Source: Zancudomyces culisetae HAW-14-8 (Eukaryota; Fungi; Kickxellomycota). Taken from it: a stretch of DNA of 64,000 nucleotides. Positions 5,209-63,377 of the stretch are shown one piece after another. The first letter of the stretch is position 1; each line of letters begins with the position of its first letter. The translations under genes and the position numbers were made by a program. The notes below the pieces were generated by a model that had not been told where the DNA came from, ran no database searches, and saw nothing but the letters and a program-made list of their open reading frames with translations. The stretch covers positions 1,426,001-1,490,000 of the forward strand of contig JBNJNM010000012.1 in assembly GCA_052426225.1 (NCBI GenBank), given 5' to 3'.

Positions 5209-5264
5209 ATAACAACTTGCATAGGAAATAGCAAAAAATATAAAATATAAAACTAAAAATAATA

Positions 5265-5335
5265 TGCGGTTGCCTGGAATCGAACCAAGGTCGACGCGGC
5301 CACAACGCGATGTACTGCCACTATACTACAACCGC
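5265..5335 (-). tRNA. tRNA-His(GTG), intronless
   Basis: Reverse complement GCGGTTG...TAGTATAGTGG...TCGCG-TTGTGGC-CGCGT...GGTTCGATTCC...CAACCGC-A; acceptor stem, A and B boxes present, T-runs downstream. Confidence 0.95.
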
Positions 5336-5364
5336 TTGATTTGTGACAGAATTTAATTTTTTGT

Positions 5365-5737
5365 TGTCGGTTTTACCCGACTTTACCGCCTTAACAAGTA
5401 TTTTGAAAGTTTATACTATAATCTAATAACTACCTGAAGACGGTAGGACCCAGATTCAATGGCTTAATGTGTTTATTTTTGATTATAAACTAAAGAAAAA
5501 AGATACTGAATTCAGTAGGTCAGATACTTAGCCTTATATCTGATCTCTCATATTTTAAATAAACTAACTATATTATAACTATATAAGAAACATTGATAAA
5601 ATTAATATAAAATTAATATAAAAATTAATAGAGATTTACACGGGAAAAACCTCATAGGTGAAAAACACCGTGTAAGTCTTTGCACATCACACGAAAGCAC
5701 CCGTGTGATGTACATCCTGTCGCTCATTGATGCGACA
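5365..5737 (-). mobile_element. Solo LTR-like unit A (373 bp)
   Basis: TGTCG...CGACA termini, flanking TTTGT duplication (5360-5364/5738-5742), ENE-like hairpin 5636-5675. Confidence 0.7.
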
Positions 5738-5739
5738 TT

Positions 5740-5984
5740 TGTCGTATAATTAGTAGCACCTTATTCTATGAAAACTTTTTCCCAATGGGTTTTTCCTCAT
5801 ACAACGTTTATTAGTTTATTATTAGTATATATATAGTATTTAAACAATCAGTGGCATACACCTACTGATTATTTAGTTAAGAATTGCAACAATATCATAA
5901 GGACATGGTTGCAATTGTCTTTCATAGCAGCTAATAGCTACACCACGTTGTAAACAACCAACGTGGAAAGTTAATCTTAGTACA
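5740..5984 (+). mobile_element. Solo LTR-like unit B, inverted orientation; right end uncertain
   Basis: Starts TGTCGTAT; ENE-like tatgaaaac-TTTTT-cccaatggg-TTTTT-cctcata on the plus strand (5767-5801); candidate end GTACA followed by TTTTT. Confidence 0.45.
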
Positions 5985-6070
5985 TTTTTCTACATATGAG
6001 TATAAAAATCATGTTGGAGAATCTAAATAAAAAATCATGAGTAGTTTAATAAAAATTCACTACAGTATTG

Positions 6071-6354
6071 TGTTGTAATTTTAGATTTCAGAAAATTTCT
6101 CAGGAAATTTCCGCAACTAAACCTACAAAAAGTTCTGCTAATAGAGGGGGATTGTTACTGGAATAAGTTTTACTTTATTTAACCAGTCAACCCTACCTTT
6201 TTAGCTTATATTTAATTTAGTTTTATGTATTTATTACTTCAATAAATGCAATAAAACTGGGTAAAATTACGCCCAACTCCTAAAATTTGGTGTGCAAAAC
6301 GACTAATTTTGGTCCAAAAATTAGTCTCTGATACCTTTCTGACACCCTTTGAAA
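6071..6354. mobile_element. Solo LTR-like unit C, degenerate right end
   Basis: Starts TGTTGTA; ATTG at 6067-6070 and 6355-6358; right terminus reads TGAAA rather than TGACA. Confidence 0.55.
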
Positions 6355-6356
6355 AT

Positions 6357-6758
6357 TGTGTTACGCTTCACTACCTATGTTTTTTTTTGGTTTTAGGTAG
6401 GTTTTTGCTCAAATCACAAATTTCAATTTTATAGAGTAAAATCAAGTATTTTAGAGCTAATTTGTATTTTATTTAATGAATAACTTTTAAAAATAAAAAG
6501 ATAAAACCACCAAACTTGTGGTGGGGTTACTAGTAATATACTAGTACCTGACTAGCTATTTTATTAGAACTTTATATAATAGAAACTTAAAATAAAACAA
6601 TTAAAACTGAATATTTCTCCAACATTTGAGTAATTTATTACCCAAGAACTCCCAGATTTCTTGCTCGAACACCCGAGATAACGGTGGTTATTCGGTGTTT
6701 GAGAAGCTGTATGCTGTTTATCTAATAGTTTAGCTTGGATAGAACTAAGCATACAACA
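6357..6758. mobile_element. Solo LTR-like unit D (about 400 bp)
   Basis: TGTG...GCATACAACA; internal hairpins; TSD only approximate (GTAT/GTTAT). Confidence 0.6.
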
Positions 6759-6764
6759 GTTATT

Positions 6765-7017
6765 TGTTGTGTTTGCCATGTTTAACGTCCCATTTAGTGT
6801 TTTTTACACCAAATAACACACGGGACGGGTCATTTTACTTACTTTTTACTATATGCTGCGAATTATTATATAGTACTTTGGATTTTGCAAAAGAGGACAT
6901 TTATTTAGTTAAACAAAAATTATAATTTTATACAATAAAATCTACAAAAAATCTAACTAAAAATTACAAAACACAATTAACCAATGGAAATGTTTCACCT
7001 ATTGTAGGCATACAACA
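6765..7017. mobile_element. Solo LTR-like unit E (253 bp)
   Basis: TGTTGTGT...ATACAACA; near-identical same-length copy at 7490-7742. Confidence 0.85.
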
Positions 7018-7021
7018 GTAT

Positions 7022-7482
7022 TGTTGTATAATTAAATTTTATTTATAATTATTTATTTTTTTCTTATTTATATATGTATAATATGTATCGTATAATTATT
7101 GTTATAATTATAAACTTAGTTGAAACTATTATAAACTTAATATAAACATCTGTTGTTGATCATAACTATTTATTTACTACTATAAAGCTTGTATGATAGA
7201 ATGATATTTATTTCCTTATGCAATAACTAACCCTTTAAATACTTTTCCTAGTATTATAAACATACTAATAACTAACTATTGAACTAATAATAACTAAATA
7301 TACTAAAACTGAAACAATTTAAATGAGTAATAAACTAATACTCTTGAAAAAACATCAATGAATCAGTTTCATTGAATACTAAAAAAACTAAAACTAAAAG
7401 TATATTAATAATTTAATTATTTCACTTGATGATAAACATATAATATTAGTTTATCACCAAGGGTTCATGTCACTATATGACA
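7022..7482. mobile_element. Solo LTR-like unit F (461 bp)
   Basis: TGTTGTATA...TATATGACA; GTAT on both flanks (7018-7021, 7483-7486). Confidence 0.75.
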
Positions 7483-7489
7483 GTATTTT

Positions 7490-7742
7490 TGTTGTGTGTT
7501 GCCATGTTTAACTTCCCATTTAGTGTTTTTTACACCAAATAACACACGGGACGGGTCATTTTACTTACTTTTTACTATATGCTGCGAATAATAATAGAAA
7601 ATTATGATTTTGCAAAAGAGGACATTTATTTAGTTAAACTAAAATTTCAATTTTATACAAAAAAATCTACAAAAAATCTAACTAAAAATTACAAAACACA
7701 ATTAACCAATGGAAATGTTTTGCCTATTGTAGGCATACAACA
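7490..7742. mobile_element. Solo LTR-like unit H (253 bp, same family as E)
   Basis: TGTTGTGT...ATACAACA; TTTT on both flanks. Confidence 0.85.
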
Positions 7743-7745
7743 TTT

Positions 7746-7978
7746 TGTCGTGTAGTGAAAATGCTTAAGCTCCTACTTGGTAACTTTCGCTACCAAGTAC
7801 TATACGGAACGGGTCAATTTCAATAATATATAAATTTATTATACTATTATTTATCTGTGGAAAAAGACAATTTATTAATTAATTCCATTCAAACATATTT
7901 ATACTATTCTATAAAATACATAAATATAACTAACCAATAAAATTGGGACAACTCTTCAGTATAGTTTACTATACGACA
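7746..7978. mobile_element. Solo LTR-like unit I (233 bp, diverged relative of E/H)
   Basis: Terminal inverted repeat TGTCGTGTAGTGAA / TTTACTATACGACA; shares acgggtca, aaagaca-type and taaccaat blocks with E/H. Confidence 0.8.
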
Positions 7979-7983
7979 TATTG

Positions 7984-8399
7984 TGTAATATTTAAAGTCA
8001 ATATTATTATACCCGTTATGGGTGCACAGTGTCAATACACTAGTTATTTTCTTTACGGAGGGTGTTTAGGTCCACCGTTACTACGAATAACTTAATTAGT
8101 GTAGACACTTGTTCTAAGTTAATTATTGTATATTCACTAATTTATACTCTAAAAACTATATATCTGAACTTGTATCTATATAACTATTAACCAAAAAAAT
8201 TCTCCTGTAAAAACAAAATGATAACGCGGACTTGTTATCAAGGAAGTAGGAAAAAACCCTCCTCAGGGAGAAAATCCAATCTTCCCGATAATTTAATACT
8301 AATAATAATAATAATAAAATAATAATATTATGACTAATCAAATAACTAGTTACCTATCCAATTCCTGACAAGGGGTTATCCATCAATTTCGATATGACA
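7984..8399 (-). mobile_element. Solo LTR-like unit J (416 bp)
   Basis: TGTAATAT...ATATGACA; ATTG on both flanks (7980-7983, 8400-8403); ENE-like hairpin 8242-8285. Confidence 0.8.
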
Positions 8400-8401
8400 A
8401 T

Positions 8402-8698
8402 TGTGGTAAAAATTGTTACTATGAACCTTTTTGCTTAATTGTAATTTTTACTATTCTTATACTTGTTATTGTATAAGGGTACTTTCAAAATAATATACTA
8501 GTATCTATTATGTTTAGATTTATTTATTGTAAAGGACAAAGAATTTTATAATACAGAATTAAACTTATTTAAATAAAACTAAAATATATTAAGAAATAAG
8601 TTGATAACGATTAGAACTACAACCTATCATATTCCCAAAAAACCACAAGGGGAAAAAATGGAATAGTCGGATTGTAATATCCAATAATTCATACAACA
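8402..8698 (-). mobile_element. Solo LTR-like unit K (297 bp)
   Basis: TGTGGTA...ATACAACA; GTAT right flank matches the reconstructed left flank; ENE-like hairpin 8630-8665. Confidence 0.8.
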
Positions 8699-8703
8699 GT
8701 ATT

Positions 8704-9040
8704 TGTTAAAATATGATTATATATTTATATTATCACCTTTAAACCCATTTATTTTCTAGTTTTATACAATATTATTTGATATTTTATATAAACTGTATAT
8801 ACTACTGTATTGTTATTTTTGGTTAAGAGTTATTTTTATTCAATAAGTTGTGGGCGATACTATTAACCCCCAAAATTTCCCTATAATTGTATGCTAACTA
8901 ATTACTAATTTAAACTATCCTAATTATGAAATCGTTGAACAAAAACCACGAGGGGAAAAAGGTCCAATCTAAAAATATTGATAATTATAATTTCCTAATA
9001 AATAATATAAAAATTAAGTCCATTAGTTCCACTAATGACA
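8704..9040 (-). mobile_element. Solo LTR-like unit L (337 bp)
   Basis: TGTTA...TGACA; TATT on both flanks (8700-8703, 9041-9044); ENE-like hairpin 8935-8968; related to 61187-61514. Confidence 0.8.
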
Positions 9041-9044
9041 TATT

Positions 9045-9376
9045 TGTTATCAAAAGCTCAGATTCACAGCTTTTCTTTATCAATTAGTTGGAAAATATTA
9101 TAATAATTATACTATGTACTGTTTTATTATAAGTTTTCACTATAATACTATAAGTTCCTGTGTAGAACCAACTTTATTAAAATGATATTTTTCTTTCTAG
9201 GTCTTTTAAACAACCAATTTATACAAAATTCAAATACTAATAGATAATAATTTATACTAATTAACTGCTTTTTTTACTTTCTTATCATGTCATAGAAAAA
9301 CCAATAAGATAAAAAAACTATACATGGTTCCTACAAATAAATAAACATATGCAAACATTCATGATTTGCATAAACA
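9045..9376 (-). mobile_element. Solo LTR-like unit M (332 bp, most distal)
   Basis: TGTTATC...GCATAAACA; ENE-like hairpin 9286-9327; blocks shared with units of the 61.7-63.4 kb stack; TSD not preserved. Confidence 0.7.
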
Positions 9377-9443
9377 AATACTACTTTAAATATCCTAATA
9401 AAATATACACAGACTACTTCTGTGTTTACTAATAATAAATATA

Positions 9444-23106: not shown

Positions 23107-26100
23107 TTAATGTAATTTTTGAAGCTCCTCAAGAATAATAGTGTTGATGACATCCCTTCGGAGTTTGAGCTCAGCAGGACCTATTCCAAGGGCACCTGCG
23201 ACTTGGTTTCTGACGTCCTTTTTGGAAACAGTCATCAGATCACATCCTCCAAGAATTCGTGAAACAGCTGACCTAATAGCTTCATCAGGAATTCCAGATT
23301 CCCATGCCTGTGGAGCAGGTGCAACATTGTTAGTTGTATTCTCTTGTTGGTCCATAACCACTTGGTTCATGGCGGCAGCATTTACCATATTGGGGGCAAA
23401 TTGATTTTCGCTATAAGCTGGGGCGGACATATTTGGTATACTGCTGTAAGGAGAAACCATTCCAACTCCTGGGTTAGCCATGTTCATGTTCATGTTCATG
23501 TTCGTGTTCATGTTCATGTTCATGCTATTGTTAGGAATCATACCACCATAAGTGTTGTTTATAACCATGCTCTGGTGTTGAAGTGGAGATGGTACCCCAA
23601 ACTCGGCTGCGTTTACAGGAACAGACATTCGGTTAGCCATGTTTTGTGACATGTGATCTGGAACCATTCCCGAACTGGCAAAAGAAGGATTTTGTCGCAT
23701 TGGAACCCCTGCTCTAACCATATCAGGATTAAAGCTGTTGCGATAGTTTGGATCAACAAAATTATTGTTGTACATCATACTAGCCCTCTGGTTTTCATCC
23801 CAAGCTTCACTGTAACCATTGTGATGTGGGTTGATAGTAAACTTAGATACGCCGTTGTTTTGATATCCATATCCATACCCACCACCTTCTGGAATATAAA
23901 CAGATGCTGTAGCTGAGCCAGGACCAGAAGTCATAAGCCTGCTCATTGCACGTGGAATGTTTCCAATGGCCGATCCAGATCGAGGCACAACACTGCCAAG
24001 CTGGGAGCCGTTTTCTTCCTTGTCCTTGTTGGAGCTCATGTCCCACACCAACTCTTTCTCGTAATCAGACCACTTACGCATGGGTATGGTGGCGGGATCA
24101 AATAAATCGGCTTCGTCGGCATTGACTAATATTTTTGCACCGGATTCACCTACTACAATTCTAGTATTTCCCCATGAAAAGTCATCAAAGTGCCAGAAAG
24201 AATATACTGGAATGATACAAGAAAACAATGGAATTGCCAACAAGTATATAATCATCCAGCCAATGTGTTGCCATTGCCTGTGAAATATGAAGACCAATGC
24301 TTGCATAGCATAAATACCAACCAATAGGTATACACTGACGTATGATGTGTTCGCGTCTGCCGAAGTGAGCTGGTATGCCAATATAGCCAAATATCCGAGA
24401 GTTGCAGGCATCACCAATGTTGAAATGAGATCTATGAACACCACAAACCTCATGGAAAAGCAACAGAATCCACACATGTTAGAAAGAAAAGCAAGCTCAA
24501 AGAGATTGTGGACAGTCGAGTTGATCCATCGACGACGTTGAGATACCAAAATACTCCAACTATCTGGAGCATTTGTTTCACACTTGGCATCAGCAATAAA
24601 TCTCGTCTTGTAATATGAAAAGTTCTTTAACATCAGCGTTGTTAGATATCGGTCCTCACCCAGATACAAAAGATTCTTCTTGTGCAACGTGTCGGCCTTG
24701 TTTGTTGAATACTCCTCAATAATATTGTTAGCAATCAACAAGGGTGCTTTATCGACTCCCCTCATTCTGTACATGGTGAAACATCCAGGCAAACAGGTAA
24801 CTGTACCAAACAGCGATTCAAAGGCCTTTGACAGATGATGCGCAATGAAATACTCATATACCTGCATCATGGTTGTCCACGATGACTTTGCATTGGCGAG
24901 TCTTGTTTCACCACAAATTCCCATTGTCTTTGAGTCGTGCTGCAAAGCAGAAACCAGCCTGTTTAGTGAGTCTTCGTAAACTATTGTGTCGGCATCAACC
25001 ATAAACACTAGCTCGTAGTATCCTGGGTTGACACCAATAACATTTTTGATTTGATGGAACATTTCCAGTTCGAGTGGAGTCATTGGAGAGTTGAAGTGTA
25101 CCTTATTAAAGAATCTCATCAATAGGATTTGAGAATCACGCTTTCCTCTGTTTCCTGGTTTGGACCTTTCAAGCGGAGTTCCACATTTGGCAATAACCAG
25201 GTAAGGAACAACTCTTCCTGCTATTTCGTACAACCCTGAATAGACTTTGGCCATGTTGTGCTGTTTCATGCCATCACCAAGAGCAATGTAGCTTAGTGCC
25301 TCAGAATCCTCATTTGAATTTACACCTAGTATATCCAGTACTATTCTGGGAGTCGGTCTATCATTACCAGCTCCCATAATCATTCCGTCACAAACAATAA
25401 ACAAAAGTTTTCGCTTGTCATCATATTTTAACTTGGCTAGAGAATCTATGGTACCTCTCAGCGATTCTTCACCCTCTGTATAACATGGAATGTTACATAC
25501 GACAAAAATGTTTGATGGCTCTGGCTCTCTGTTGGATCCAAACCTAATGGAAGCAATGAATTTGAAAAATATAATCGATACAATAAACACTGAACCGGAC
25601 AACAACATATAGTTGGCAACATAACAGCGAACCGATTTTCTGATATCAACAACACCCATGTAAAACGCTCCTCTTAGACAGTTATAGCTAAGTTGTGCAA
25701 TCTTTGGTTTTAGCTCAGCATATTTTTTCCACTGTTCTGTGACATCCTTTCCAGGGTTGGATTCAAATAATACTTTAATGTCATTGTCAAGGAACTCTCT
25801 GTTGGAAACTGTTGTAGTGTCATTGGAAATTCCATCAGGTGTAATCAAAAACGGTGCTCCTCCTGAATTGATGTAGTTGGTCAGATCAAACACCTCGCCA
25901 TTTATTATGCTTCTGTATTTAATCACATCTGTATTAGAAGCAGTATCAGTTGGACTATCCTTTAATATGTATTTCGGATCGATAGCTATATTTCCTGCAC
26001 GTCTGGATTTTCTCAGTACTCTCATTACGTGATACTGGTAGTAATTGAATGCCTGGTCATCGTCTGGATGTCTGTACCATCTGTGGTCATGATAGTATAC

Positions 26101-28944
26101 ATCTGAGTATAGTGAGGGTTTATCCTGTAGTGATAGTCGAGGGTCAATATCCAATCCAAGACAGACAAAAGATAGCTGGAATGGGAATAGGTATGATAGA
26201 TCTTTGCCTAAATAATTTCTGTCTGCAATATACTTAAAGTTGATACCAGCATGGTTGAAGTCTTTAACATTAAATACCTCACCACGAACAGAAACAAGAG
26301 CATCTTTGGCCGTACTATGACCAGCAAGTTCCTGCGCTGAGTAGATGTTTTGTTTTGGGCATATTATCACACCCAGCCCACCTATCCAAAACAGTACCAG
26401 GGCACACAAGTAGAAAATAATTGAGCACAATGCAAACTTTTCCCTCCATGCCGTGACTTGATCACTTCGCTCAAGCTTGGCAAATTTCTTAATCATGGGA
26501 TCAGGTATCCACCATGTAAAGAAGGTTGTAGCACGCAACCAGTTTCTGCGAGTACTGGACATCTGATCCTTTTTGACCTTGGTATCATCAATATCCTTTT
26601 CCTGCGTCTTTTTCCCTTTCTTATTCTTTGATTCTCCACCACCAAGCTTGTCTGAATCCGCTTCATTCTTTTCAGAGATTAATTCTGAGTCTTCAAACGA
26701 GTCTTTCTCATTCAGCTCCAAATCCTCTAAAGACTTTTTAAATACGGTAGGACTGCTCTCAATCTCCGTTCTTCTAAGCGGATCGTCCAGTTTTCGCCAA
26801 CACGAGTAGCTGACAAAAACCTTGGTCTCCCCTATACTCATGTCAGCGCTGCTAAGCTTCATGTTTGATTTAAGCTTCTTGCATTTCTCCTTTGCATTTA
26901 TCGATGAGTCGGTTAGTAGCAAACTTGAAATCAACTCATCATACCTAAAGCAGAAATCTTCATGTTTCATCGCCGCCGCAAATTCCACGCGCTTTCTCCT
27001 AACCACATCACCCAAACTATACGCCTTGACCTGTGCCCGGATTATTTTGCTTTCAGCGACTCTTGGTCTAAAGGAGCTGTTGGATTTCATACACAAAACA
27101 AACCAAGGAAGTGTATCGTCAAGAGTAGTAACCAAATCGGTAATATCCCGCTGGAATTTGGTGACTACACACTCACCAGATTTTGTGGGTGTGGCTTTGG
27201 CTTTTTGTTTTTTAGTTTTTGTTGGAGCATACTTGGTAGTATCCTCAGTGTTGCTAAACAAACCAGCAATAAATGTATTTTTGGACCCATTGGAGTATCT
27301 ATCTCCTACAAAAATCGTGGTAAAGTCATCAACCGAGGATTCCATGTTGAGCGGAGTAAACTTATCTACCATATACGTGGTACTTCCAAAAAAGTGCTGG
27401 ACTCCAAATACATTAAGATCGTTTTTGCTGTCCACGTTTACGTAGAATGGGTTTGATGCCTCGGCTTTTGAAAACATTCGCAGCGCTTGCATACTTGCGT
27501 CCTTCCCCTTTAATCCAGTGTCAAACCTTTTTTCTTTATTTACACCAGTTTTGTAGGCGTTATATTGCTGATCCAATACCGCAAAGAGTCCATCTGGTGC
27601 CTTCATAAACAAGTCAAGACATTTGCTACGGTCTTTGTGTTTGACCACTGGCACACTTTTTAATTTTTCTGCAGCATACTCCTCGTTGCCCAAGGTAAAC
27701 ACTTGGTAGTTCATGAAATGGTGCATTCTTTCAGCAAGGTAGTTGAAACACATCTGGTAAAATCCAATTTTTTTTCCTGCAGCATACCCCGGCATATCAA
27801 CCAGCCCAATAAATGTATTAACCTCTGCTTCATCCCTGCATAGCTGCTGATTAATGGTATCAATGATCCAGTTTACAAGCTGCTTGTACAGAGTTCTTGC
27901 CAGCTCATGCTTTCGTTCGTTTGCTCCCTCAATGTCCAACACCACCTCAACTCTTTGTCGCCCTATTAGCTGCGACTTATTTGTTATTGCTTCTTCCAGT
28001 GTCTTTTTCTCAACCCCAAGGCTATCGACCACAGATTCGATTCCATTCACAATCAGTTCTTGTCTATAACTATTCGAATCTTTTCTAAAAGTTAGATTTC
28101 CCAAGGCCAAAATACCAGCCAAAACTTTGAATATCGATTTGATACTTTTGGTGTTAATCTTCATGGCTTTCATAGCCTGAGTAAGCTGCTCAAAGCCAAT
28201 CCCATCATCAGTATGAATAAGATTGGTATCTACCTCGGCCTTTTTTAGATATTCGAATGAAATTCCACCACCTATACCAATTCCCAGCTCCTCACGCATT
28301 TTACCTGACCCATTGGCCAAATAATGAAACACATGAAAGTTTCGTTCACTGTTTCCAGGATGGGTAACCCTGCTCAGTTCAAGGTGATAACTTATTGTTT
28401 TACACCCAATTGCCTCTGCATTATCGTCAAACTGCACCTCCTGATAAATCCCAGCTCTCGATGCATTTACATGACTGGTGTGAGCATTTGTAAACGCCTC
28501 AATCACTACATTTGAAGCTCTCACAAGTCGAAAGACATCTTGAGGCTTTCGTTTTTCCTTGAGCAATGAAAGCATCGCCAACGCCAATTTGCGCTGAGAT
28601 GTTTTTCCACCCCCACTCTCTCCCAAAAATATCAAAGATTGGTTCAACTCCGTTTGCTTCATGTGTAAATAGGCAGACTCGGCCACTTTGAAGATATGTG
28701 GTTCCATCTCCTTGGCATTTTTATCCACCTTTTTGAAATCTTCGACATACAACCGCGCAATATTGTCTCCATAACACATTAGCTCTTCGTTTGGGTTGAT
28801 GTGAACCAGCATACGTGCCCCAATTTGCGTATATACCTGAAGTTTGTTCGCTTCAAATTTTTCCAGCAACTCCCTAACCACCTCGTCATCAGTGGATGAG
28901 CCCGCCCTTGGACCTTTTGCAAGGTCAAAATTCTTTGGTTCCAT
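23107..28944 (-). CDS. Myosin-motor chitin synthase (class V-like), 1945 aa
   Basis: Myosin P-loop GESGGGKT, DMPGY switch II; WREK, cytochrome b5-like region, PCYTEGE, GKRDSQ, VDADT, CLPGCF, LGEDRYLTT, QRRRW; C-terminal DEK-C-like domain. Confidence 0.97.
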   Translation of the reverse strand: MEPKNFDLAKGPRAGSSTDDEVVRELLEKFEANKLQVYTQIGARMLVHINPNEELMCYGDNIARLYVEDFKKVDKNAKEMEPHIFKVAESAYLHMKQTELNQSLIFLGESGGGKTSQRKLALAMLSLLKEKRKPQDVFRLVRASNVVIEAFTNAHTSHVNASRAGIYQEVQFDDNAEAIGCKTISYHLELSRVTHPGNSERNFHVFHYLANGSGKMREELGIGIGGGISFEYLKKAEVDTNLIHTDDGIGFEQLTQAMKAMKINTKSIKSIFKVLAGILALGNLTFRKDSNSYRQELIVNGIESVVDSLGVEKKTLEEAITNKSQLIGRQRVEVVLDIEGANERKHELARTLYKQLVNWIIDTINQQLCRDEAEVNTFIGLVDMPGYAAGKKIGFYQMCFNYLAERMHHFMNYQVFTLGNEEYAAEKLKSVPVVKHKDRSKCLDLFMKAPDGLFAVLDQQYNAYKTGVNKEKRFDTGLKGKDASMQALRMFSKAEASNPFYVNVDSKNDLNVFGVQHFFGSTTYMVDKFTPLNMESSVDDFTTIFVGDRYSNGSKNTFIAGLFSNTEDTTKYAPTKTKKQKAKATPTKSGECVVTKFQRDITDLVTTLDDTLPWFVLCMKSNSSFRPRVAESKIIRAQVKAYSLGDVVRRKRVEFAAAMKHEDFCFRYDELISSLLLTDSSINAKEKCKKLKSNMKLSSADMSIGETKVFVSYSCWRKLDDPLRRTEIESSPTVFKKSLEDLELNEKDSFEDSELISEKNEADSDKLGGGESKNKKGKKTQEKDIDDTKVKKDQMSSTRRNWLRATTFFTWWIPDPMIKKFAKLERSDQVTAWREKFALCSIIFYLCALVLFWIGGLGVIICPKQNIYSAQELAGHSTAKDALVSVRGEVFNVKDFNHAGINFKYIADRNYLGKDLSYLFPFQLSFVCLGLDIDPRLSLQDKPSLYSDVYYHDHRWYRHPDDDQAFNYYQYHVMRVLRKSRRAGNIAIDPKYILKDSPTDTASNTDVIKYRSIINGEVFDLTNYINSGGAPFLITPDGISNDTTTVSNREFLDNDIKVLFESNPGKDVTEQWKKYAELKPKIAQLSYNCLRGAFYMGVVDIRKSVRCYVANYMLLSGSVFIVSIIFFKFIASIRFGSNREPEPSNIFVVCNIPCYTEGEESLRGTIDSLAKLKYDDKRKLLFIVCDGMIMGAGNDRPTPRIVLDILGVNSNEDSEALSYIALGDGMKQHNMAKVYSGLYEIAGRVVPYLVIAKCGTPLERSKPGNRGKRDSQILLMRFFNKVHFNSPMTPLELEMFHQIKNVIGVNPGYYELVFMVDADTIVYEDSLNRLVSALQHDSKTMGICGETRLANAKSSWTTMMQVYEYFIAHHLSKAFESLFGTVTCLPGCFTMYRMRGVDKAPLLIANNIIEEYSTNKADTLHKKNLLYLGEDRYLTTLMLKNFSYYKTRFIADAKCETNAPDSWSILVSQRRRWINSTVHNLFELAFLSNMCGFCCFSMRFVVFIDLISTLVMPATLGYLAILAYQLTSADANTSYVSVYLLVGIYAMQALVFIFHRQWQHIGWMIIYLLAIPLFSCIIPVYSFWHFDDFSWGNTRIVVGESGAKILVNADEADLFDPATIPMRKWSDYEKELVWDMSSNKDKEENGSQLGSVVPRSGSAIGNIPRAMSRLMTSGPGSATASVYIPEGGGYGYGYQNNGVSKFTINPHHNGYSEAWDENQRASMMYNNNFVDPNYRNSFNPDMVRAGVPMRQNPSFASSGMVPDHMSQNMANRMSVPVNAAEFGVPSPLQHQSMVINNTYGGMIPNNSMNMNMNTNMNMNMNMANPGVGMVSPYSSIPNMSAPAYSENQFAPNMVNAAAMNQVVMDQQENTTNNVAPAPQAWESGIPDEAIRSAVSRILGGCDLMTVSKKDVRNQVAGALGIGPAELKLRRDVINTIILEELQKLH

Positions 28945-34378: not shown

Positions 34379-37300
34379 CTACCCCCTGACTTTGTCCTCT
34401 AAAACCCTCTCAACCACCCCATTCACTATCTCTCTATTTCTTTCCATCTCTTCTCGGTCAAATCCATATCTTCTCCATAAAATCTCTCGTATTTGTCTCT
34501 TGGTGACTTTCTCCAAATCTTCCGTCCTGAGAATCTCATCTATTGCATTTTCCATCATCATCCATCCATTTCGTTGTTGATGCACCACGCCCCTTCCATA
34601 GACACTTGGTGATAGTATACCCGATCGCGGGCTACTTCTAATATACTTGATGTTTTGTTCCGACGTTCCAACTCTTATGCTAGGCACATATTGACTATAG
34701 CTTGTGACAATATGGCTCGGGTACATACTTAAATTACTCGGAATACTATAGTTATTTGTATACACCTCATCCTCCTTTTTTTCTTCTTGCCTAGCTTCTT
34801 TATACTGATTTATTCCCTTTCTCACTTGACCACCACTATTACTGTAAAAAACATCTGTCATCTTATCGAGATTTCTGGTTTGTACCATTTCATGTCCAGC
34901 ACTTTTAATATTGCCAAAGCTACTGTTGTTTTGAATCAACATCCCCTCGGTATTTTCAAAAAAATGAATTCCTCCAGCTGGCCTCATCCGGATCTTGTTT
35001 GTATAATTATTGTACTGGTTGCTGACTCGCTGTAACCCATACAAAATCTCGCTGTTTGCCCGGTTTGGGTTCGGTTGTGGCGAAGCTGCATTTCCCATGA
35101 TATTCTGTACTCTATGCAGAACCACTGATCCTGTTCCTATGCTTTTGGATCTCAATCCAAGCTGGTTTACACCACCATTCAGGTGGAAATTAGAGCTTTC
35201 AAGGATCTGCCTCTTTCGTTGTTGTTGGTATTCGTCTGTTTTAATTGTTGGGCTGTTACTTGGTATTGGTCCTCTACTACTCGATCTCTTTGTAATATCT
35301 GCGTCGTTTTCAGCAAGCCGGATAATGCAATGCTCGTCCCATGATTTTAGTGGAATGTTGACTTGATCGTACTCATTTTGATTTGGCGAAGTTTCAACCT
35401 TGTTGTTTCCAGAATCGCCTAACACTACCCTTGTGTTTCCCCATGAAAAATCATCAAAATGCCAGAACGAATATATCGGGATGAAAAACGAAAACACTGG
35501 TATCGCAAAAATATACACTATCATCCAGCCAATGTTCTGCCACTGCTTCTTTATAATGAACAAAAGTGCTTGTAGTGAATAAATTGCTGCCATCAAGCAG
35601 ACGGAAACCATTGGAACCTGCGATGTTGATGTAAACAACAGATACAAAATGTACCCGAGGTACACCACCGTGGCTGGCATAATCAACGTCGATAGCAGGT
35701 CGACAAGTACCACAAACCGCATCGAGAAGCAACAAAACCCACACAACCTAGGCAGGAACACCAGCTCAAACATGTTGTGGACCGTCGAGTTGATCCACCG
35801 ACGTCGCTGCGATAACAGTACCTGCCACGAGTCTGGCGCATTTGTGCGGCACTGTGCATCCGGTGTAAACTTTGTTTTGTTGTACGGCAGATGCTTGAGC
35901 ATCAGAGTTGTTAAATATCGGTCCTCACCCAAACTCAGAAGATTTTTTTTGTGTAGCGTATCAACTTTGCTTTCCGAGTATTCTTGAATAATTTGGTTGG
36001 ATATCAGTAGCGGTTGGTTGGTTTCGGGTGTCCGGAGCCGATACATGCTGAAACATCCTGGTAGACAGGTAACTGATCCGAACAGCGATTCAAATGCCTT
36101 TGACAGATGGTGGGAGATATAGTACTCGTATACCTGGATCATAGTCACCCATGTGGCCTTTTCATTTGCCAGCATAGTTTCCCCACACAGGCCCATCAGC
36201 TTGGAATCGTGGACCATGCAGCTAACCATTCTGTTGAGGGACTCTGGATATACATATGTGTCTGCATCTACCATCATAACAAATTCGTAGTATGCAGGAT
36301 CAACACCAATGACGTTTTTTATCTGATGGTATATTTCCAACTCGAGAGGGGTCATTTTTAAGTTAAAGTGAACCCGATTAAAAAAATTCATCAGTATAAT
36401 CTGTGAATCCCTTTTGCCTCGATTCCCCTGTTTTATGTGCTCTTGCTTATTACCATGTTTTACTACTACAAGGTATGGGACTACATGTCCTGATACCTGA
36501 TAAAGCCCCGAAAACACTTTTCCTTTGTTATGCTTCTTAAACCCCTCACCCAGCGAGATGTAATCAAACGAGTTTGTGTCATAGTCCTGGTTGTGGCCAT
36601 GGTTATTATTATGGTTACTATTTAGAATGTCCAGAACTATCCTGGGTGTTGGACGGTCGTTTCCTGTGCCCATAACCAAACCATCGCAGATAATAAATAG
36701 AAGCTTTCTCTTGTCGTCGTATTTCAACGTGGCAATGGAATCAATGGTGAGTCTCAACGACTCCTCACCCTCCGTATAGCATGGAATGTTACAAACCACA
36801 AAGTTGCTATGTTCCTCCGGATCACGTCTTGGCGAAAGCTGCAAGGCGGCTAGAAACTTGAACAAAATAACACTTGCAAGGGCTACTGAGCTAGCCAACA
36901 ATACATAATTTGCAAAATAACACTGGAATGATGTCCTGTGGTCAACTATTCCTGCATAATACGCGCCCCTCAGACAGTTGTAGTGTAGTCGCTGACTCTT
37001 TTTATTTTTTCTAAAGTATCGGTCCCACCGTTCGGTAATATCCATTCCAGAATATACTTGGAACATGTTTTTTACATTCTCATCAAGAAACTCGCGACTG
37101 GCTGTTTGGTTGGAAACTCCTGGTGGAGAAAGAACATATGGTGCTCCATTGTAGTTTATGTAATCTGTCAAGTCAAACACTTGTTGGTTGATTACAGCCC
37201 AGTATCTTTTCTCACCCTTATCCGTGCCTTTACCCATTTTCTGTATTTTTTTGGGATCGATCGACACTTGCCCACGTGAATACAAGTTTCTCAACATCCT

Positions 37301-40300
37301 CATGATTCTATACTGGTAGTGGTTATACCCACCACTAACCATCTCAGGATGCTTGTAATACCTGTGATCGTGAAGCCATGCGTCTGTATACGGGTCAGCC
37401 ATAGCAGATAATGCTAGCCTGGGGTCTGAAACAAGCCCTGCACATACAAACGATAGTTGCAACGGAAAAAGGTTTGTCAGATCCGTTCCAAGATAGTTTC
37501 CCTCAACTACGGTTTTGAAATCCACGCCTACATGGGTAAAGTCCTTTATATCAAATATCTCTCCTCTAATCGAAATAAGTGCATTTGACGCTGTATTGTG
37601 GCCTTTGAGTTCCTCAAGTGTCAATGAACTTTGCTTGGGGCATATTAATATTCCAAGCACAGCTATCCAGAACACCGCCATACAACAACACAAAAAAATA
37701 AAAACGCAAAGAGTAACTTTTTCTCGCCATGAGATGACTTGCTCTTCTAACCTAAAGTTGCTAAAATACTTGATAACGGGCGATGGAATCCACCATGTGG
37801 TAAACCAGACCACAAACAACCAGTATTTTCTAGTTTTGGTAAGCTTGGCTTCCGTAGTGATGTTCTTTTCCAGAGCACCCACCTTCCCATGGGTTGCGTT
37901 TTGGTCATTACATAATTGTTTTGGTTTTCCAAAGCTGTTTGCACTGTCGCTGTGGTTAGCCCCACCACCACCATAGAATTCGTGTACCTTGCTGTCACTG
38001 TTGAGTTTCAACTCCGGGTCTTTTTGATTATACCCATCATATTCATCATACTCCATAATATTGCTATTGTTGTCGACAACCCCGTAGTATAGATACGTCA
38101 GCTCTTTAATCACGCTATCGTGTCTCTCATCAATATCGCACAAGCGGTCATTATCATCTTGACTGTTTACAGAAAGTGCGCATTCAATCGGGATATCGGT
38201 ACCTTGAGTATGCAACGCAAACGCAGACGCATTTAACCTTTCCCTTGAAAAATGGTCCATCTCTAGCCTTTTCCAGAGCTCAAAGCTGTAAAAACACTTT
38301 GTTTTTCCAACTACATATTCCGATTTTTTCCACTGCAATTTGGTTCCCATCTCAATGCACTTATCGCGGCTGGTTTTTCCAAGAAAATGTATATTCTTGA
38401 TTTCAGGAATATCGCTATACCTGTGGAAAAAAGCGTCATGCTTCAAATTGATGGAAAGGTCAACTGACTTTTTCTGTGCAATAGCCTCTAGTCCAAAACA
38501 CTTGACTTGTTGCAAAACATACTCAAAATCAAAAGATACAGGTGACTTCTGTCTGTTTGGATTTAGTGAAATAACAAACCATACTTTTGTTTTGTCAATA
38601 TGTGATATGGTGTTGGCTAACCATCCTTGAAACATTGCCAAGTTGGTTCTCAGTTCACCATCCGTTTTTAAAGAAAGTTCTTCTTTCGATTTCTCGGTCC
38701 CCAAAGCCGGGGAAATTGAATCAAGTGTTTGCATCGCGTCTACGGGAAACGAACCGCGTACATGAGTGTCTCTAGTTCTAATGTAACGTTGACCAAAAAG
38801 CTGCCTTATAAATGGATTAACAGAGCCGTTATAATACTCTGGCTTTTTGTGGTATGCACCTAAATCTAGGTGGAATGTGTCTGAACTTGGGTTATGTACT
38901 GGAAATCCCCTAAATATGTTGACAACGTCTATTCCTAATGCATCGTAGTTTTCTCTCGAAAACCCATTTACGCAATATATTACTGGTTTAACAAAATGGT
39001 TGATTTGAAAAGATAGGTTGTTTTTCTTGGGCTGAGTATACACTATACCCTCCCTATCTAGTGAACCACAAACGTGGCTTAACTGGTCCAGTATCGCTAT
39101 ATCCAGGTCAGGATTATTGGCTATGTGATACTGTGGGTCAAAATCCATCTGATGCGTATCGCTGACCACATTATCAATTACTGAAAACAATCCCACAGAT
39201 GGCTTCATAAACATATCTAGAATGCGTGTATTATCTAGGTACTCGGCGATTTTTGTGTATTCTCTCACGCCCTCAAGCTCGTACTCATCGTTTCCCAAAA
39301 CAAAGGTTCTGTAGTTCATAAAATGAAACATCCTCTCGTTTGTGTAATTGACCAATAGCTGGCTGTAAGAGTTTTGATGACACTGGTTGAAACCTGGGAA
39401 ATCGAATAGGCTCAAGTTGATGCTTTCCTCACGTGATTCAATGTTTCGATTCATCTTATCCACCAGATAGTAAACTAAAAGACTGTATAAATATCTTGAC
39501 AAGTTGTTGATTCTCTCATACGCCATTTCTAGGGTTAGAAACACTGTGCATAGCTCCAATCCAACTTTTACAGTTTTGTATTTTATAACCGAAAGAAAAT
39601 TGCCAATATCGACTCCCAACATCAATGCTGTCCTCTCAAACAGCTCAACAGACTTTACATAGATTTCTGCATTATCAGAGTGAGAGTATACCTTTTGTGC
39701 TCCAAGCTGAATATTTCCTAGATTTAAAATCGATACTAGCACTTTGAAGATTTCGGTCTGATAAATTTCGCCAAAACCGACATTTAACAGTGCCTTTTTT
39801 ATATCCTGGAGTTGCGTATGGTTGTTGACATCCACCACTCTCGACTTTAGCCCGGGTTTATTTAAATATTTATAATGTGAAGAGCTTCCTAGTAGCCCAT
39901 ACTTTACCCTCTCTTGCTCTGAACAACCATCTATCAAATAGTAGAAAATATGGAAATTTCGCTCATGGATTACCTCGCTGTCGATTCTTTGAAGATCAAT
40001 GGCATAAATGCCTATTTTACCACCCGCGATAATTCCTTGGCCATTGTACTGTAGTACTAAACAACTCATAATCCTGGTTGCATTGGCATGTGTGCTAGTT
40101 TTAGCACTACTAAACACCTCCACCACATAATCAGCGTCTACAATTCGCTCATACATTGCGGTGTCCCGTTTACTTTGCCATCTAACCAACGAAAGCGCTT
40201 TTAATGCCATTCGTCTGTTTTCTGTCTTTCCCGAACCTGACTCACCTATAAACACTATTGACTGCCCAACGCTTGTTCGTCTCAGATAAAAATACGCGTT

Positions 40301-61186: not shown

Positions 61187-61514
61187 TGTTGTAGAATCTA
61201 TAAAACTCTAATGTTTGTTTATTAATATCTTTTTATAAGTATGGTTTGTATATTTGCTTATTTGTTTAATACTATTATAACTTATTATTATATTATGTGA
61301 TTAAAAGATTACTTTATTCATTTTTGTTGAGGGCATTCTCCTATACCCTGAAATATCTTCGATAATAAAACTAAATGTTATCCTACTTAATGACTAAAAA
61401 TATAGATTGACAAAAACCACGAGGGGAAAAAGGTACAATCTCAGTTAACTATACTAATGCAATAAAACTCAATAATTTAAACTAAAAATAACTATCACGT
61501 ATTCTCATACAACA
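61187..61514 (-). mobile_element. Solo LTR-like unit downstream of tRNA-Leu (328 bp)
   Basis: TGTTGTAGAAT...ATTCTCATACAACA; TAAT on both flanks (61183-61186, 61515-61518); ENE-like core caaaaaccacgaggggaaaaaggt identical to that in unit L. Confidence 0.85.
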
Positions 61515-61570
61515 TAATGACAAAACCATAAAAAATAAATGCTTCTGTATGTATAAAAATATTAACAAAA

Positions 61571-61652
61571 TGGTATCAGTGAGATTCGAACTCACGCCTC
61601 TTTCGAGACCGCAACTTGAGTGCGGCGCCTTAGACCGCTCGGCCATGATACC
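61571..61652 (-). tRNA. tRNA-Leu(CAA), intronless
   Basis: GGTATCATGGCCGAGCGGTCTAAGGCGCCGCA-CTCAAGT-TGCGG, long variable arm, GTTCGAATC, TGATACC-A; TTTT immediately 3'. Confidence 0.95.
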
Positions 61653-61654
61653 AA

Positions 61655-61727
61655 TGGGAGCTCCGAGGATTGAACTCGGGACCGTACGATCTTCAGTCGC
61701 ACGCTCTCCCAGCTGAGCTAAGCTCCC
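61655..61727 (-). tRNA. tRNA-Phe(GAA), intronless
   Basis: GGGAGCTTAGCTCAGCTGGGAGAGCGTGCGA-CTGAAGA-TCGTA...GAGTTCAATCCTC-GGAGCTCCC-A. Confidence 0.95.
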
Positions 61728-61735
61728 ATATATTT

Positions 61736-62189
61736 TGTTAGCGAATTCCAGGTTCCACCGCTATTGTGTAAAAAATATATTTATTTGATAGAAAAACTAT
61801 ACTATGTACTAATGTTGTTAAGTTTTCATTATAGTAACTATAACTTTAATAAATAGACCAAACTTGTATTTTACGTGTTTATTTGATGATGTTTAAACTA
61901 TCTGAATAACTATCATATTTATACTTTTTTAAAACAACTATTAAACTTAAAACCTAAATATATTTTAAACTTAAAACTATACTAATTAAAATAATATTCT
62001 AGAATGTTGCTGTAGAAAAAATCCAGAAGGATAAAAAAAACTTGGCAACACATAATATACTAAATAACCTATAATAAATATTAACTTATATTAAGAGATA
62101 AACCTAAATATTAATAAATAGAAATAAATATGTAATTGGTAAGTTATTATTATATAATGTCTAGAGGTAGCTCTAGCCACTATATAACA
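61736..62189 (-). mobile_element. Solo LTR-like unit 1 (454 bp; youngest of the Phe stack)
   Basis: TGTTAGCG...TATATAACA, 8 bp from tRNA-Phe 5' end; ATTT on both flanks; ENE-like hairpin 62005-62050. Confidence 0.85.
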
Positions 62190-62192
62190 ATT

Positions 62193-62456
62193 TGTTAGAT
62201 TCAATTTATTATCGATTCTAACTGGTTCTACTAGAGGGGTGGTATTACTAGTCTGGGTTTAACCATTTTAACTAGTTACCACTTTCTAGTCATACATATA
62301 AATGGAACCGGAACATTTATATGGGTCAATATTTGACAATTTATTTAAGATTCAAAATAATAATTTCTTAATACTAAATTTTACTAGAAAAACTAATAAA
62401 ATCACTAACTATAAAATTAACCAATAGTATGCAAACATTCTATTTTGCATACAACA
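62193..62456. mobile_element. Solo LTR-like unit 2 (264 bp, E/H/I-related)
   Basis: TGTTAGAT...ATACAACA; TATT TSD after removing unit 1; gggtca and ttaaccaat blocks as in E/H/I. Confidence 0.8.
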
Positions 62457-62461
62457 TATTG

Positions 62462-62915
62462 TGTTAGCGATTTAGGTTCTTAACCACTATAAAGAATATA
62501 TTTACTATGTTAACTAATATATACTAAGTACTATTTTTAATCAAGTTTTCGCTATTTATGTTAAAGACTTTAGTAAATAGACCAAACTATGTTTATGTGA
62601 TTTATTTGATAACGCTACTACAAGAAAAATATGTAGTATTTAAAATAATATTTTATACTATAATAAACTTAACTATATACCTAAACTACTAATAAACCTA
62701 TAACTATTTTTTTTATATTTGTTCATGCCTAGAAAAAATCCGAATATGAAAAAAACTATGCATGAACCTAGAATTTATGAATAAACTAATAATATACTAT
62801 AACAGATCAAATATTATGATCTACAAAAAGTAATATAAAATTAATATAATAAAACCAATATTATTAGAAGGTAGATTATATAGTGACTAGAGGTGATCTG
62901 CGTCGCTATATAACA
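62462..62915 (-). mobile_element. Solo LTR-like unit 3 (454 bp, family of unit 1)
   Basis: TGTTAGCG...CGCTATATAACA; ATTG on both flanks; ENE-like hairpin 62721-62767. Confidence 0.85.
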
Positions 62916-62917
62916 AT

Positions 62918-63377
62918 TGTTAGCGAAACACAGGTTTACTTCCCTATTGATTTTTATATATTTATTTTGATAGAAATACTATACTAAGTACTATGTTTAA
63001 AATTGTTTTCACTATAGTAACTATGCTTAAATAAATAGACCAAACTTAATAAACTATATTTAATTGATAATGTAATACTAAATGAATATCTAGCCATATT
63101 TATACATTTTAAAAATGACTATTACAATATTCTGAAATAATTTTATACTAATTAATTAAAAATCCAATAAAATATATATTAAATTGAACTAGAGTGTTCC
63201 TGTAGAATTAATCCAGAATGATAAAAAAAACTAGGCAACACATAATATAATAAATAACCTATAATAAATAATATCTTATATTAAATGATAAACCTAAATA
63301 TTAATATAAAAGTATATGAATAACTGTTAAGTTAAAATTATATAATGACTAGAGGTAGCTCTAGCCACTATATAACA
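62918..63377 (-). mobile_element. Solo LTR-like unit 4 (460 bp, close relative of unit 1)
   Basis: TGTTAGCG...ctagaggtagctctagccactatataACA (same end as unit 1); ATAT TSD after reconstruction; ENE-like hairpin 63195-63240. Confidence 0.85.

What the first reader, a model, noticed from the sequence alone, without database searches (positions are those of the whole stretch)
8242..9327. ENE-like poly(A)-protecting triple-helix element conserved across otherwise unrelated LTR units
Seen: the minus strand of many units has a lower stem, U4-8, short hairpin, U5-6, lower stem; e.g. L ttggacc-TTTTT-cccctcgtgg-TTTTT-gttcaa, K tattcca-TTTTTT-ccccttgtgg-TTTTTT-gggaata, J ggaagattgga-TTTT-ctccctgaggaggg-TTTTTT-cctacttcc. 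Also at 5636-5675, 9286-9327, 61405-61441, 62005-62050, 62721-62767, 63195-63240, and inverted at 5767-5801. Stem sequences differ between families while pairing is kept. Known: this is the architecture of the ENE of KSHV PAN RNA (UUUUUCC...GGUUUUU), and ENEs are reported in plant and fungal retrotransposons. Inference: the units are retrotransposon LTRs, the motif sits in U3 upstream of the poly(A) site, and the stack is a natural library of compact ENE variants.
Basis: partly seen in the sequence, partly recalled or inferred. Interest (0 to 1): 0.85.

Follow-up and report, generated by a model that had tools for sequence, protein, structure and literature searches.

The report
ENE-like hairpins in gypsy LTRs
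Many families of Ty3/gypsy retrotransposons piled up next to tRNA genes in this gut-fungus genome carry, in the part of their LTR that ends up in the 3' end of their RNA, a small hairpin with two facing U-runs of the known poly(A)-clamping (ENE) type; it is a real, conserved structure but belongs to a kind already described for plant and fungal transposons.

Summary
All ten listed sites fold on the stated strand as lower stem / U4-8 / short G+C hairpin / U4-8 / lower stem; one (63195-63240) is degenerate. The units are LTRs of about 5-kb Ty3/gypsy elements, stacked upstream of tRNA-His and tRNA-Leu/Phe. In every family where a full-length or pol-adjacent copy gave the orientation (16 or more motif types), the U-rich version lies on the coding strand. 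It sits in the first 10-250 nt of a 300-520 nt LTR, ahead of the first TATA-like box, which fits U3. More than 25 motif variants differ in arm sequence but keep pairing: cognate arms -7.4 kcal/mol, swapped arms -2.9, 0 of 20000 permutations. LTRs of different groups are otherwise barely alignable, though all elements belong to one gypsy clade (pol 56-100% identical). The best reading is a single-domain ENE that clamps the poly(A) tail. That function is inferred: no RNA run was listed, the poly(A) site is unmapped, and Rfam gave no hit. ENEs inside LTRs of fungal transposons were reported in 2016, so this is a new member of a known kind. The scan noted the same motif on other pieces of this genome, and one follow-up there reached the same verdict.

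The parts
8242..8285 (-). ENE-like motif J: lower stem, U4(CU), 4-bp G+C hairpin, U6, lower stem
   Evidence: Fold (-14.0 kcal/mol). It lies at position ~113-160 of the 415-nt J LTR. The same motif is on the sense strand of full-length L014 and L016.
8630..8665 (-). ENE-like motif K: 6-bp lower stem, U6, CC..GG hairpin, U6
   Evidence: It lies at position ~33-70 of the 297-nt K LTR. Sense strand established in full-length L013 and L015.
8935..8967 (-). ENE-like motif L: 6-bp lower stem, U5, CC..GG hairpin, U5
   Evidence: This type is on the sense strand of L017, L020, L021, L039, L045 and L047-L051.
9286..9327 (-). ENE-like motif b: U7 / A-U-closed hairpin / U5. Solo-LTR family only.
   Evidence: Orientation is inferred only from homology of the LTR 5' terminus to other families; no full-length copy was found.
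5636..5675 (-). ENE-like motif a: 8-bp lower stem, U5, 4-bp hairpin, U5, in the LTR next to tRNA-His
   Evidence: -11.4 kcal/mol. The same type is on the sense strand at LTR position ~65-118 in L037, L038 and L060.
5767..5801 (+). Inverted copy with the U-rich version on the plus strand; the 5' arm is damaged
   Evidence: It is a relative of the motif in L026:4557-4599 and of the L019 type.
61405..61441 (-). ENE-like motif c (L-type relative), downstream of tRNA-Leu/Phe
   Evidence: The same type is on the sense strand in L051.
62005..62050 (-). ENE-like motif d: U8 / 4-bp A-U/G-C hairpin / U6
   Evidence: Full-length d element L062 has pol on the same strand as the U-rich version, with the motif at LTR position ~145-190.
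62721..62767 (-). ENE-like motif e: 8+3-bp lower stem, U7, hairpin with UUCG-like loop, U6
   Evidence: -12.6 kcal/mol. Only solo LTRs were found. The related motif in full-length L041 is on the sense strand.
63195..63240 (-). Decayed copy of d (motif f); the 3' U-run is interrupted by two A
   Evidence: The same interruption occurs in both LTRs of L062.
7985..8399 (-). J-family LTR (sense = minus), 415 nt
   Evidence: Matches L014 LTRs 289-698 and 5248-5657. Ends were read.
8402..8698 (-). K-family LTR (sense = minus), 297 nt
   Evidence: Matches L013 and L015 LTRs. Ends were read.
5265..5335 (-). tRNA-His(GTG), target of the first LTR stack
61570..61728 (-). tRNA-Leu(CAA) and tRNA-Phe(GAA), abutting; target of the second LTR stack

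Best explanation
The motifs are single-domain ENE-type RNA elements carried in the U3 region of the LTRs of a clade of tRNA-gene-targeting Ty3/gypsy retrotransposons. The host is a Harpellales fungus, Zancudomyces culisetae or a very near relative. Because U3 of the 3' LTR is transcribed, the hairpin lies in the 3' untranslated end of the genomic RNA, roughly 100-300 nt before the poly(A) tail. The inferred mechanism is as follows. The tail folds back into the U-rich internal loop. One U-run pairs with the A's by Watson-Crick bonds and the other by Hoogsteen bonds, giving U.A-U triples. The G+C-rich pairs on either side hold the loop open, and the lower stem offers A-minor contacts. The clamped tail resists deadenylation, so more full-length RNA survives for translation, packaging and reverse transcription. 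Shown here: the structure, its covariation, its place in the LTR and its strand. Inferred: poly(A) binding and stabilisation.
For: The units are LTRs of ~5-kb elements with PPT, PBS and a gag-PR-RT-RH-IN ORF. The U-rich version is on the coding strand in every family whose orientation could be fixed, and never antisense apart from a stemless false positive: L013-L017, L019-L021, L030, L033, L036, L037, L039, L041-L053, L055, L058, L060-L062. The position is 10-250 nt from the LTR 5' end, always ahead of the first TATA-like box. Arms covary: cognate arm duplex -7.42 against non-cognate -2.92 kcal/mol, 0 of 20000 permutations, with the cognate partner ranked first for 10 of 26 types. 5' arms differ at 5.5 of 8 positions on average. 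Between LTR groups the motif is the main shared block, for example a 20-nt 100% match between K and L021. 57% of the three lower-stem pairs next to the loop are G-C in LTRs of ~25% G+C, and the upper stem is closed by C-G in most types. The two U-runs have similar lengths (rho 0.37). The motif is enriched in the LTR stacks about 25-fold over shuffles and absent from the genic part of the window. The architecture and mechanism are those described for PAN and TE ENEs, including ENEs embedded in LTRs of fungal TEs (PMC7583470, PMC13541005, PMC12501189).
Against: There is no transcript evidence: no RNA run was listed, and TSS and poly(A) sites are unmapped, so U3 rests on position and TATA-like or AATAAA-like words in AT-rich DNA. 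No Rfam family matched, even at E up to 10. Upper stems are only 2-4 bp, and several variants are thermodynamically no better than shuffles. Energy and G.U counts do not single out the U-rich strand (20 against 12 G.U pairs; -9.8 against -9.1 kcal/mol, p = 0.16). Many lower stems have a mismatch or 1-4 unpaired bases at the loop junction, and some have only A-U pairs there. A young full-length d-family element carries an interrupted 3' U-run. The families share ancestry, so agreement in strand across them is not a set of independent trials.
Confidence: 0.6

Rival explanations
1. The hairpin is a structured U-rich element of the 3' UTR or U3 with another RNA-level role. It could be a docking site for a U-binding protein (La/LARP, Lsm or a polyadenylation factor), an upstream efficiency element for 3'-end formation, or a packaging or dimerisation signal, without triple-helix formation.
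For: The facts are the same as for the best explanation (sense strand, U3 position, covariation). Very short upper stems and irregular loop junctions are less than ideal for a rigid clamp. A full-length element carries an interrupted 3' U-run.
Against: Two facing U-runs of matched length, framed by G-C pairs and held by a covarying stem, is precisely the ENE design. A single-stranded U-binding site would not need a covarying lower stem or a second U-run.
Confidence: 0.25
2. The palindrome acts at the DNA or cDNA level. It could be a hairpin in minus- or plus-strand DNA that helps plus-strand priming or strand transfer, or a promoter or enhancer element of U3.
For: An inverted repeat is strand-symmetric, and energies of the two strands do not differ significantly. 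The motif lies downstream of the PPT and upstream of the TATA-like box.
Against: The distance from the PPT varies from 10 to about 250 nt between families. A transcription-factor site would conserve sequence rather than pairing. The strand of the U-runs is constant relative to the ORF.
Confidence: 0.08
3. MALAT1-like use: read-through transcripts from the LTR into the adjacent, co-oriented tRNA gene are cut by RNase P, and the U-loop clamps a genomically encoded A-rich 3' end rather than a poly(A) tail.
For: Nine of ten motif-bearing LTRs in the two stacks point the same way as the tRNA gene downstream of them.
Against: No conserved A-rich tract was seen at the LTR 3' ends. The motif is 150-400 nt from the LTR end. 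Full-length copies are also present away from tRNA-proximal positions in stacks. The follow-up on s1-647208 rejected the cassette reading.
Confidence: 0.03
4. The motifs are chance palindromes in AT-rich DNA, or a neutral passenger inherited from a common ancestor.
For: AT-rich sequence gives many T-runs, and weak scanner hits occur at chance level in genic DNA.
Against: There are 5 hits against 0.2 expected in the stack and 341 against 37 genome-wide. Pairing is kept while arm sequences diverge beyond recognition, in lineages whose pol proteins are only 56-65% identical.
Confidence: 0.03

Closest known systems
ENEs of plant and fungal transposable elements (Tycowski, Shu and Steitz 2016, Cell Rep 15:1266; cited in PMC12501189, PMC7583470, PMC13541005; the paper itself is not held)
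   Same: A U-rich internal-loop stem-loop on the sense strand near the 3' end of TE RNA. [quoted passage not shown] Fungi are among the hosts.
   Different: The host lineage (Harpellales, Zoopagomycota) is not known to me to have been covered. All variants here are single-domain, whereas most plant TE ENEs are double-domain. They are very compact (33-50 nt, upper stem 2-4 bp). U-runs reach 6-8 on both sides in several families. More than 25 variants coexist in one 27-Mb genome in tRNA-targeting Ty3-like elements.
KSHV PAN RNA ENE (single-domain prototype; Mitton-Fry 2010, as described in PMC7583470)
   Same: The architecture is lower stem / U-run / upper stem-loop / U-run / lower stem, with G-C pairs next to the loop. 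It lies upstream of a poly(A) tail. The proposed mechanism is five U.A-U triples plus A-minor contacts.
   Different: PAN ENE is 79 nt with a longer upper stem, in a viral nuclear lncRNA. Here there is no sequence similarity and no Rfam hit, junctions are often mismatched or bulged, and binding is untested.
ENE of Arabidopsis Copia93/Evade (PMC12501189)
   Same: A retrotransposon ENE shown to form a triplex with A20, to protect against CCR4a deadenylation and to raise mobility. G-C pairs next to the U-runs are essential.
   Different: [quoted passage not shown] Here there is one domain, inside U3 of gypsy LTRs.
MALAT1 / MEN-beta blunt-ended triple helix
   Same: A U-rich internal loop used as a clamp for an A-rich 3' end; the 3' end is made next to a tRNA-like structure.
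   Different: It needs a genomically encoded A-rich tract and RNase P cleavage. No conserved A-tract was seen at the LTR ends.

Membership tests
ENE (element for nuclear expression), single-domain class | Stem-loop with a U-rich internal loop: two facing U-runs of about five | tested here: met
   The 5' run is 4-8 (mean 5.8) and the 3' run is 4-8 (mean 5.5) in 32 variants. The shorter run is 5 or more in 25 of 32.
ENE (element for nuclear expression), single-domain class | G-C pairs framing the U-rich loop (upper closing pair and lower stem for A-minor contacts) | tested here: inconclusive
   The upper closing pair is C-G in most types and A-U in the b, d and e types. 51 of 90 lower-stem pairs nearest the loop are G-C. 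However, many junctions have a mismatch or 1-4 unpaired bases, and one type has only A-U pairs there.
ENE (element for nuclear expression), single-domain class | Stems supported by covariation | tested here: met
   Cognate against swapped arms: -7.42 against -2.92 kcal/mol, 0 of 20000 permutations. No R-scape or Infernal test was possible because MAFFT could not put the arms in register.
ENE (element for nuclear expression), single-domain class | Lies on the sense strand in the 3' part of a polyadenylated transcript, near the tail | tested here: inconclusive
   The sense strand and the position in the 5' part of the LTR (U3) are met. The poly(A) site and the transcript ends are not mapped, and no RNA run was listed.
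ENE (element for nuclear expression), single-domain class | Forms a U.A-U triple helix with oligo(A) and stabilises the RNA | not testable with these tools
   Needs melting, gel-shift and reporter assays.
ENE (element for nuclear expression), single-domain class | Match to a curated RNA family model | tested here: not met
   No ENE-type family was among Rfam 15 hits at gathering score or at E up to 10. I do not know whether TE ENEs are modelled in Rfam, so this carries little weight.
Ty3/gypsy (Metaviridae) LTR retrotransposon | Direct LTRs with TG..CA ends, PBS after the 5' LTR, PPT before the 3' LTR, and ORF order gag-PR-RT-RNaseH-IN | tested here: met
   LTR pairs are 89.8-100% identical. 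PBS and PPT were read. Pfam order is Retrotrans_gag/Ty3_capsid, zf-CCHC, Asp_protease, RVT_1, RT_RNaseH, Integrase_H2C2, rve.
MALAT1-type blunt-ended triple helix | Genomically encoded A-rich tract downstream of the U-rich loop, with the 3' end made by RNase P | tested here: not met
   No conserved A-rich tract at or near the LTR 3' ends of nine families. This was by inspection only.

The most novel reading that the evidence does not exclude
These would be the most compact natural poly(A) clamps known (33-50 nt, upper stem of 2-4 bp). Several have facing U-runs of 6-8 that could build longer triple stacks than the five triples seen in PAN. More than 25 covarying versions have been kept by selection in co-resident tRNA-targeting gypsy lineages of one small fungal genome. 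That would be a ready-made natural mutational series for working out the minimal rules of ENE function and for building short RNA-stabilising tags.
Probability: 0.4. Interest if true: 0.55.

Novelty: new member of a known kind. Interest (0 to 1): 0.38.

Why it matters
If the hairpins do clamp poly(A), the ENE strategy is the rule rather than the exception in a whole clade of active gypsy elements of an early-diverging, insect-gut fungus. It would also give dozens of natural, minimal, covarying variants against which the sequence rules of triple-helix stabilisers can be read: loop length, closing pairs, junction bulges, tolerance of interrupted U-runs. For genome annotation it gives a simple strand marker for solo LTRs in this genome. 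It does not open a new kind of biology, because ENEs in LTRs of fungal TEs were described in 2016.

Tried and rejected
- **Chloroplast reading.** My first guess from the tRNAs and long ORFs was a green-algal chloroplast. Pfam rejected it: myosin-chitin synthases, HECT, XPG.
- **Rfam.** Searches at gathering score and at E up to 10 gave no ENE-type hit.
- **Infernal model and the count of structure pairs.** I dropped both. I used an alignment-free test of cognate against swapped arms instead.
- **Longest contiguous helix as a measure.** It discriminated poorly (at least 5 bp in 54% of cognate against 24% of swapped pairs), because related families share arms and many stems are bulged.
- **Strand from energy or G.U counts.** Not significant.
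- **RNA evidence.** The look-up of sequencing runs listed no run.
- **The CCAGCCTTGG core.** It makes up about a third of the genome pattern hits. It is antisense, has no lower stem and sits next to a TATA box in a distant gypsy family, so it is not an ENE.
- **Cross-species test.** The only fungal relatives of the pol protein in the database were Zancudomyces culisetae contigs that are 97-99.7% identical in DNA to this genome, so they are not independent.
- **Papers.** Tycowski 2012 and 2016 are not held. What I say of them comes from papers that cite them, or is marked as memory.
- I redid it with coordinates only.

Full report
**What the window is.** The window has two AT-rich blocks (about 26% G+C) around a gene-rich middle. 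Three tRNA genes lie at the inner edges of the AT-rich blocks: tRNA-His at 5265-5335(-), and abutting tRNA-Leu and tRNA-Phe at 61570-61728(-). The long ORFs encode two myosin-motor chitin synthases, a DEAD-box helicase, a type III glutamine synthetase, an XPG-like nuclease, a HECT ligase and an MFS transporter, so this is fungal nuclear DNA. The glutamine synthetase is closest to Zancudomyces culisetae (86%), then Smittium (62%). Three Z. culisetae contigs are 97-99.7% identical in DNA to retroelements of this genome. The genome (G000, 27 Mb, 25 contigs) is therefore that Harpellales gut fungus or a very near relative.

**The observation.** Each of the ten listed sites was folded on both strands.
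- Eight fold on the minus strand as described: lower stem, U-run, short hairpin, U-run, lower stem.
- 63195-63240 is a decayed copy with an interrupted 3' U-run.
- 5767-5801 has the U-rich version on the plus strand, with a damaged arm.

A conservative scanner gives 5 hits in 5336-9400 against 0.20 expected from dinucleotide shuffles. It gives 1 against 0.14 in 61300-63400, and chance-level weak hits in the 46-kb genic part. Genome-wide, the core T5-CC-N3-10-GG-T5 occurs 341 times against 37 for the backwards control.

**What the units are.** A search of the genome with 8222-8700 split it into two repeats, each with many copies. Some copies lie in same-strand pairs about 5 kb apart. The fetched pairs are full-length elements:
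- They have direct LTRs 296-467 nt long and 89.8-100% identical.
- A polypurine tract precedes the 3' LTR and a primer-binding site follows the 5' LTR.
- A single 1473-aa ORF has the order gag, zinc knuckle, protease, RT, RNase H, integrase.

They are Ty3/gypsy elements. The genome holds a large clade of them: 767 first-look candidates, with RT-IN identity to the J element from 56 to 100%. The stacks in the window are solo LTRs inserted one after another upstream of tRNA genes.

**Strand and position.** For J and K the ORF lies on the strand that corresponds to the window's minus strand, so the U-rich version is the sense version. The same holds for every other family whose orientation could be fixed from a full-length copy or from an LTR directly following the end of pol. 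This covers L017, L019-L021, L030, L031, L033, L036, L037, L039, L041-L053, L055, L058, L060, L061 and the d family (L062). That is 16 or more motif types, with none antisense. The families share ancestry, so this agreement is not a set of independent trials.

For the b and e types only solo LTRs were found. Their orientation rests on homology of LTR termini or of the motif itself.

The one apparent exception is the CCAGCCTTGG core of a distant gypsy family (pol 28% identical). It is antisense, has no lower stem and sits just before a TATA box. It is a false positive of the pattern, and makes up roughly a third of the first 100 listed genome hits.

Within the LTR the motif lies 10-250 nt from the 5' end. 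Examples are K 33-70 of 296, L019 23-66 of 467, L020 77-114 of 318, J 113-160 of 410, a-type 65-118 of 386 and d about 145-190 of 407. It always precedes the first TATA-like word, with AATAAA-like words further on. This fits U3, which is present only at the 3' end of the genomic RNA. It is an inference, because TATA-like words are common in AT-rich DNA and no transcript ends are known.

**Covariation.** I collected cores without any condition on their flanks and grouped them by flank similarity. This gave 26 types, and more than 30 with a wider core definition. The 14-nt flanks pair far better with their own partner than with the partner of another type. The mean is -7.42 against -2.92 kcal/mol; 0 of 20000 permutations reach the observed mean; the cognate partner ranks first for 10 of 26. 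The 5' arms differ at 5.5 of 8 positions on average.

Upper hairpins also switch between C-G-rich, mixed and A-U/G-C stems. Pairs next to the loop are 57% G-C in DNA of about 25% G+C. The two U-runs have similar lengths (rho 0.37, p = 0.03; the types are not independent).

Between LTR groups the motif is the main recognisable block, for example a 20-nt perfect match between K and L021. The L-type families, however, align along the whole LTR at 64-70%, so 'otherwise unrelated' is too strong.

**Weak points.**
- Some variants are no more stable than shuffled sequence (J z = -0.84, K z = +0.64), while others are clearly stable (z -4.2 to -5.0). Large U/U internal loops cost energy, so this is expected of an ENE, but it gives no support either.
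- Neither energy nor G.U counts single out the U-rich strand. The strand assignment rests on the ORFs alone.
- Many loop junctions carry a mismatch or 1-4 unpaired bases.
- A young full-length d element (LTRs 98.8% identical) has a 3' U-run interrupted by two A.
- Rfam gave nothing.
- No RNA run was listed.

**Mechanism.** The design is that of single-domain ENEs: two facing U-runs framed by G-C pairs, held by a covarying stem, on the sense strand of the 3' UTR. In KSHV PAN RNA the U-rich loop binds oligo(A) through five U.A-U triples and three A-minor triples and blocks deadenylation (PMC7583470). About 200 ENEs were found in TEs, mostly of plants and fungi and mostly LTR retrotransposons, some embedded in the LTRs (PMC12501189; PMC13541005, legend of Figure 3). 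In Arabidopsis Evade the ENE forms a triplex with A20, needs the G-C pairs beside the U-runs, protects against CCR4a and raises mobility (PMC12501189). I therefore take the poly(A) clamp as the most likely function (0.6). The main rival is a structured U-rich protein-binding or 3'-end-formation element (0.25). Minor rivals are a DNA/cDNA-level role, a MALAT1-like use of read-through into the co-oriented tRNA gene, and chance.

**Novelty.** The kind is known. What is particular here:
- The host lineage is Harpellales, whose genomes appeared after the 2016 survey (that timing is my own knowledge).
- Only single-domain, very compact versions occur.
- Several families have U-runs of 6-8. From my memory of the abstract of Tycowski 2016, the predicted stacks there did not exceed five triples; I could not check this.
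- A large number of covarying variants sit in one small genome.

The scan had already noted the motif on other pieces of this genome. One follow-up there (s1-647208) reached the same reading: a solo-LTR stack upstream of a tRNA gene, with known-type ENE hairpins.

Noticed in passing
window 5336-9400 and 61730-63300: Nine of ten motif-bearing LTRs in the two stacks have the same orientation as the tRNA gene they lie upstream of. This suggests orientation-specific integration by this Ty3-like clade.
   Followed up: no
window 61570-61728: tRNA-Leu(CAA) and tRNA-Phe(GAA) abut with no spacer on the minus strand, so they may form a dicistronic tRNA unit.
   Followed up: no
L018:6408-6492 (G000:C6, distant gypsy family; also L022): A 16-bp hairpin flanked by U5 on both sides with a partial lower stem lies on the sense strand of U3 (MFE -23.5 kcal/mol, z -6.9). 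It may be a long-stem ENE in a family whose pol is only 28% identical to the main clade.
   Followed up: partly
L018:6530-6560 and L022 (same family): An A5-CCAAGGCTGG-A6 box sits directly before TATAAAAAG on the sense strand. It mimics the ENE core on the antisense strand and inflates pattern counts. It is probably a promoter element.
   Followed up: partly
L062 (G000:C21:1130700-1136100) and window 63195-63240: The d-family 3' U-run is interrupted by two A in both LTRs of a young full-length element and in a window solo LTR, while window copy 62005-62050 has an intact U6. This is a natural test case for tolerance of the clamp.
   Followed up: no
window 8222-8241 (minus strand, just 3' of motif J): A second small hairpin (6-bp stem, 8-nt loop) directly follows the J motif and is conserved in L014 and L016.
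   Followed up: no
window 23107-28944 and 34379-40612 (both minus): Two myosin-motor chitin synthase genes (1945 and 2077 aa, each with cytochrome b5-like and DEK_C domains) lie on the same strand, separated by a DEAD-box helicase gene.
   Followed up: no
At least four different primer-binding sites follow the 5' LTRs of the clade, so the families appear to use different tRNA primers.
   Followed up: no
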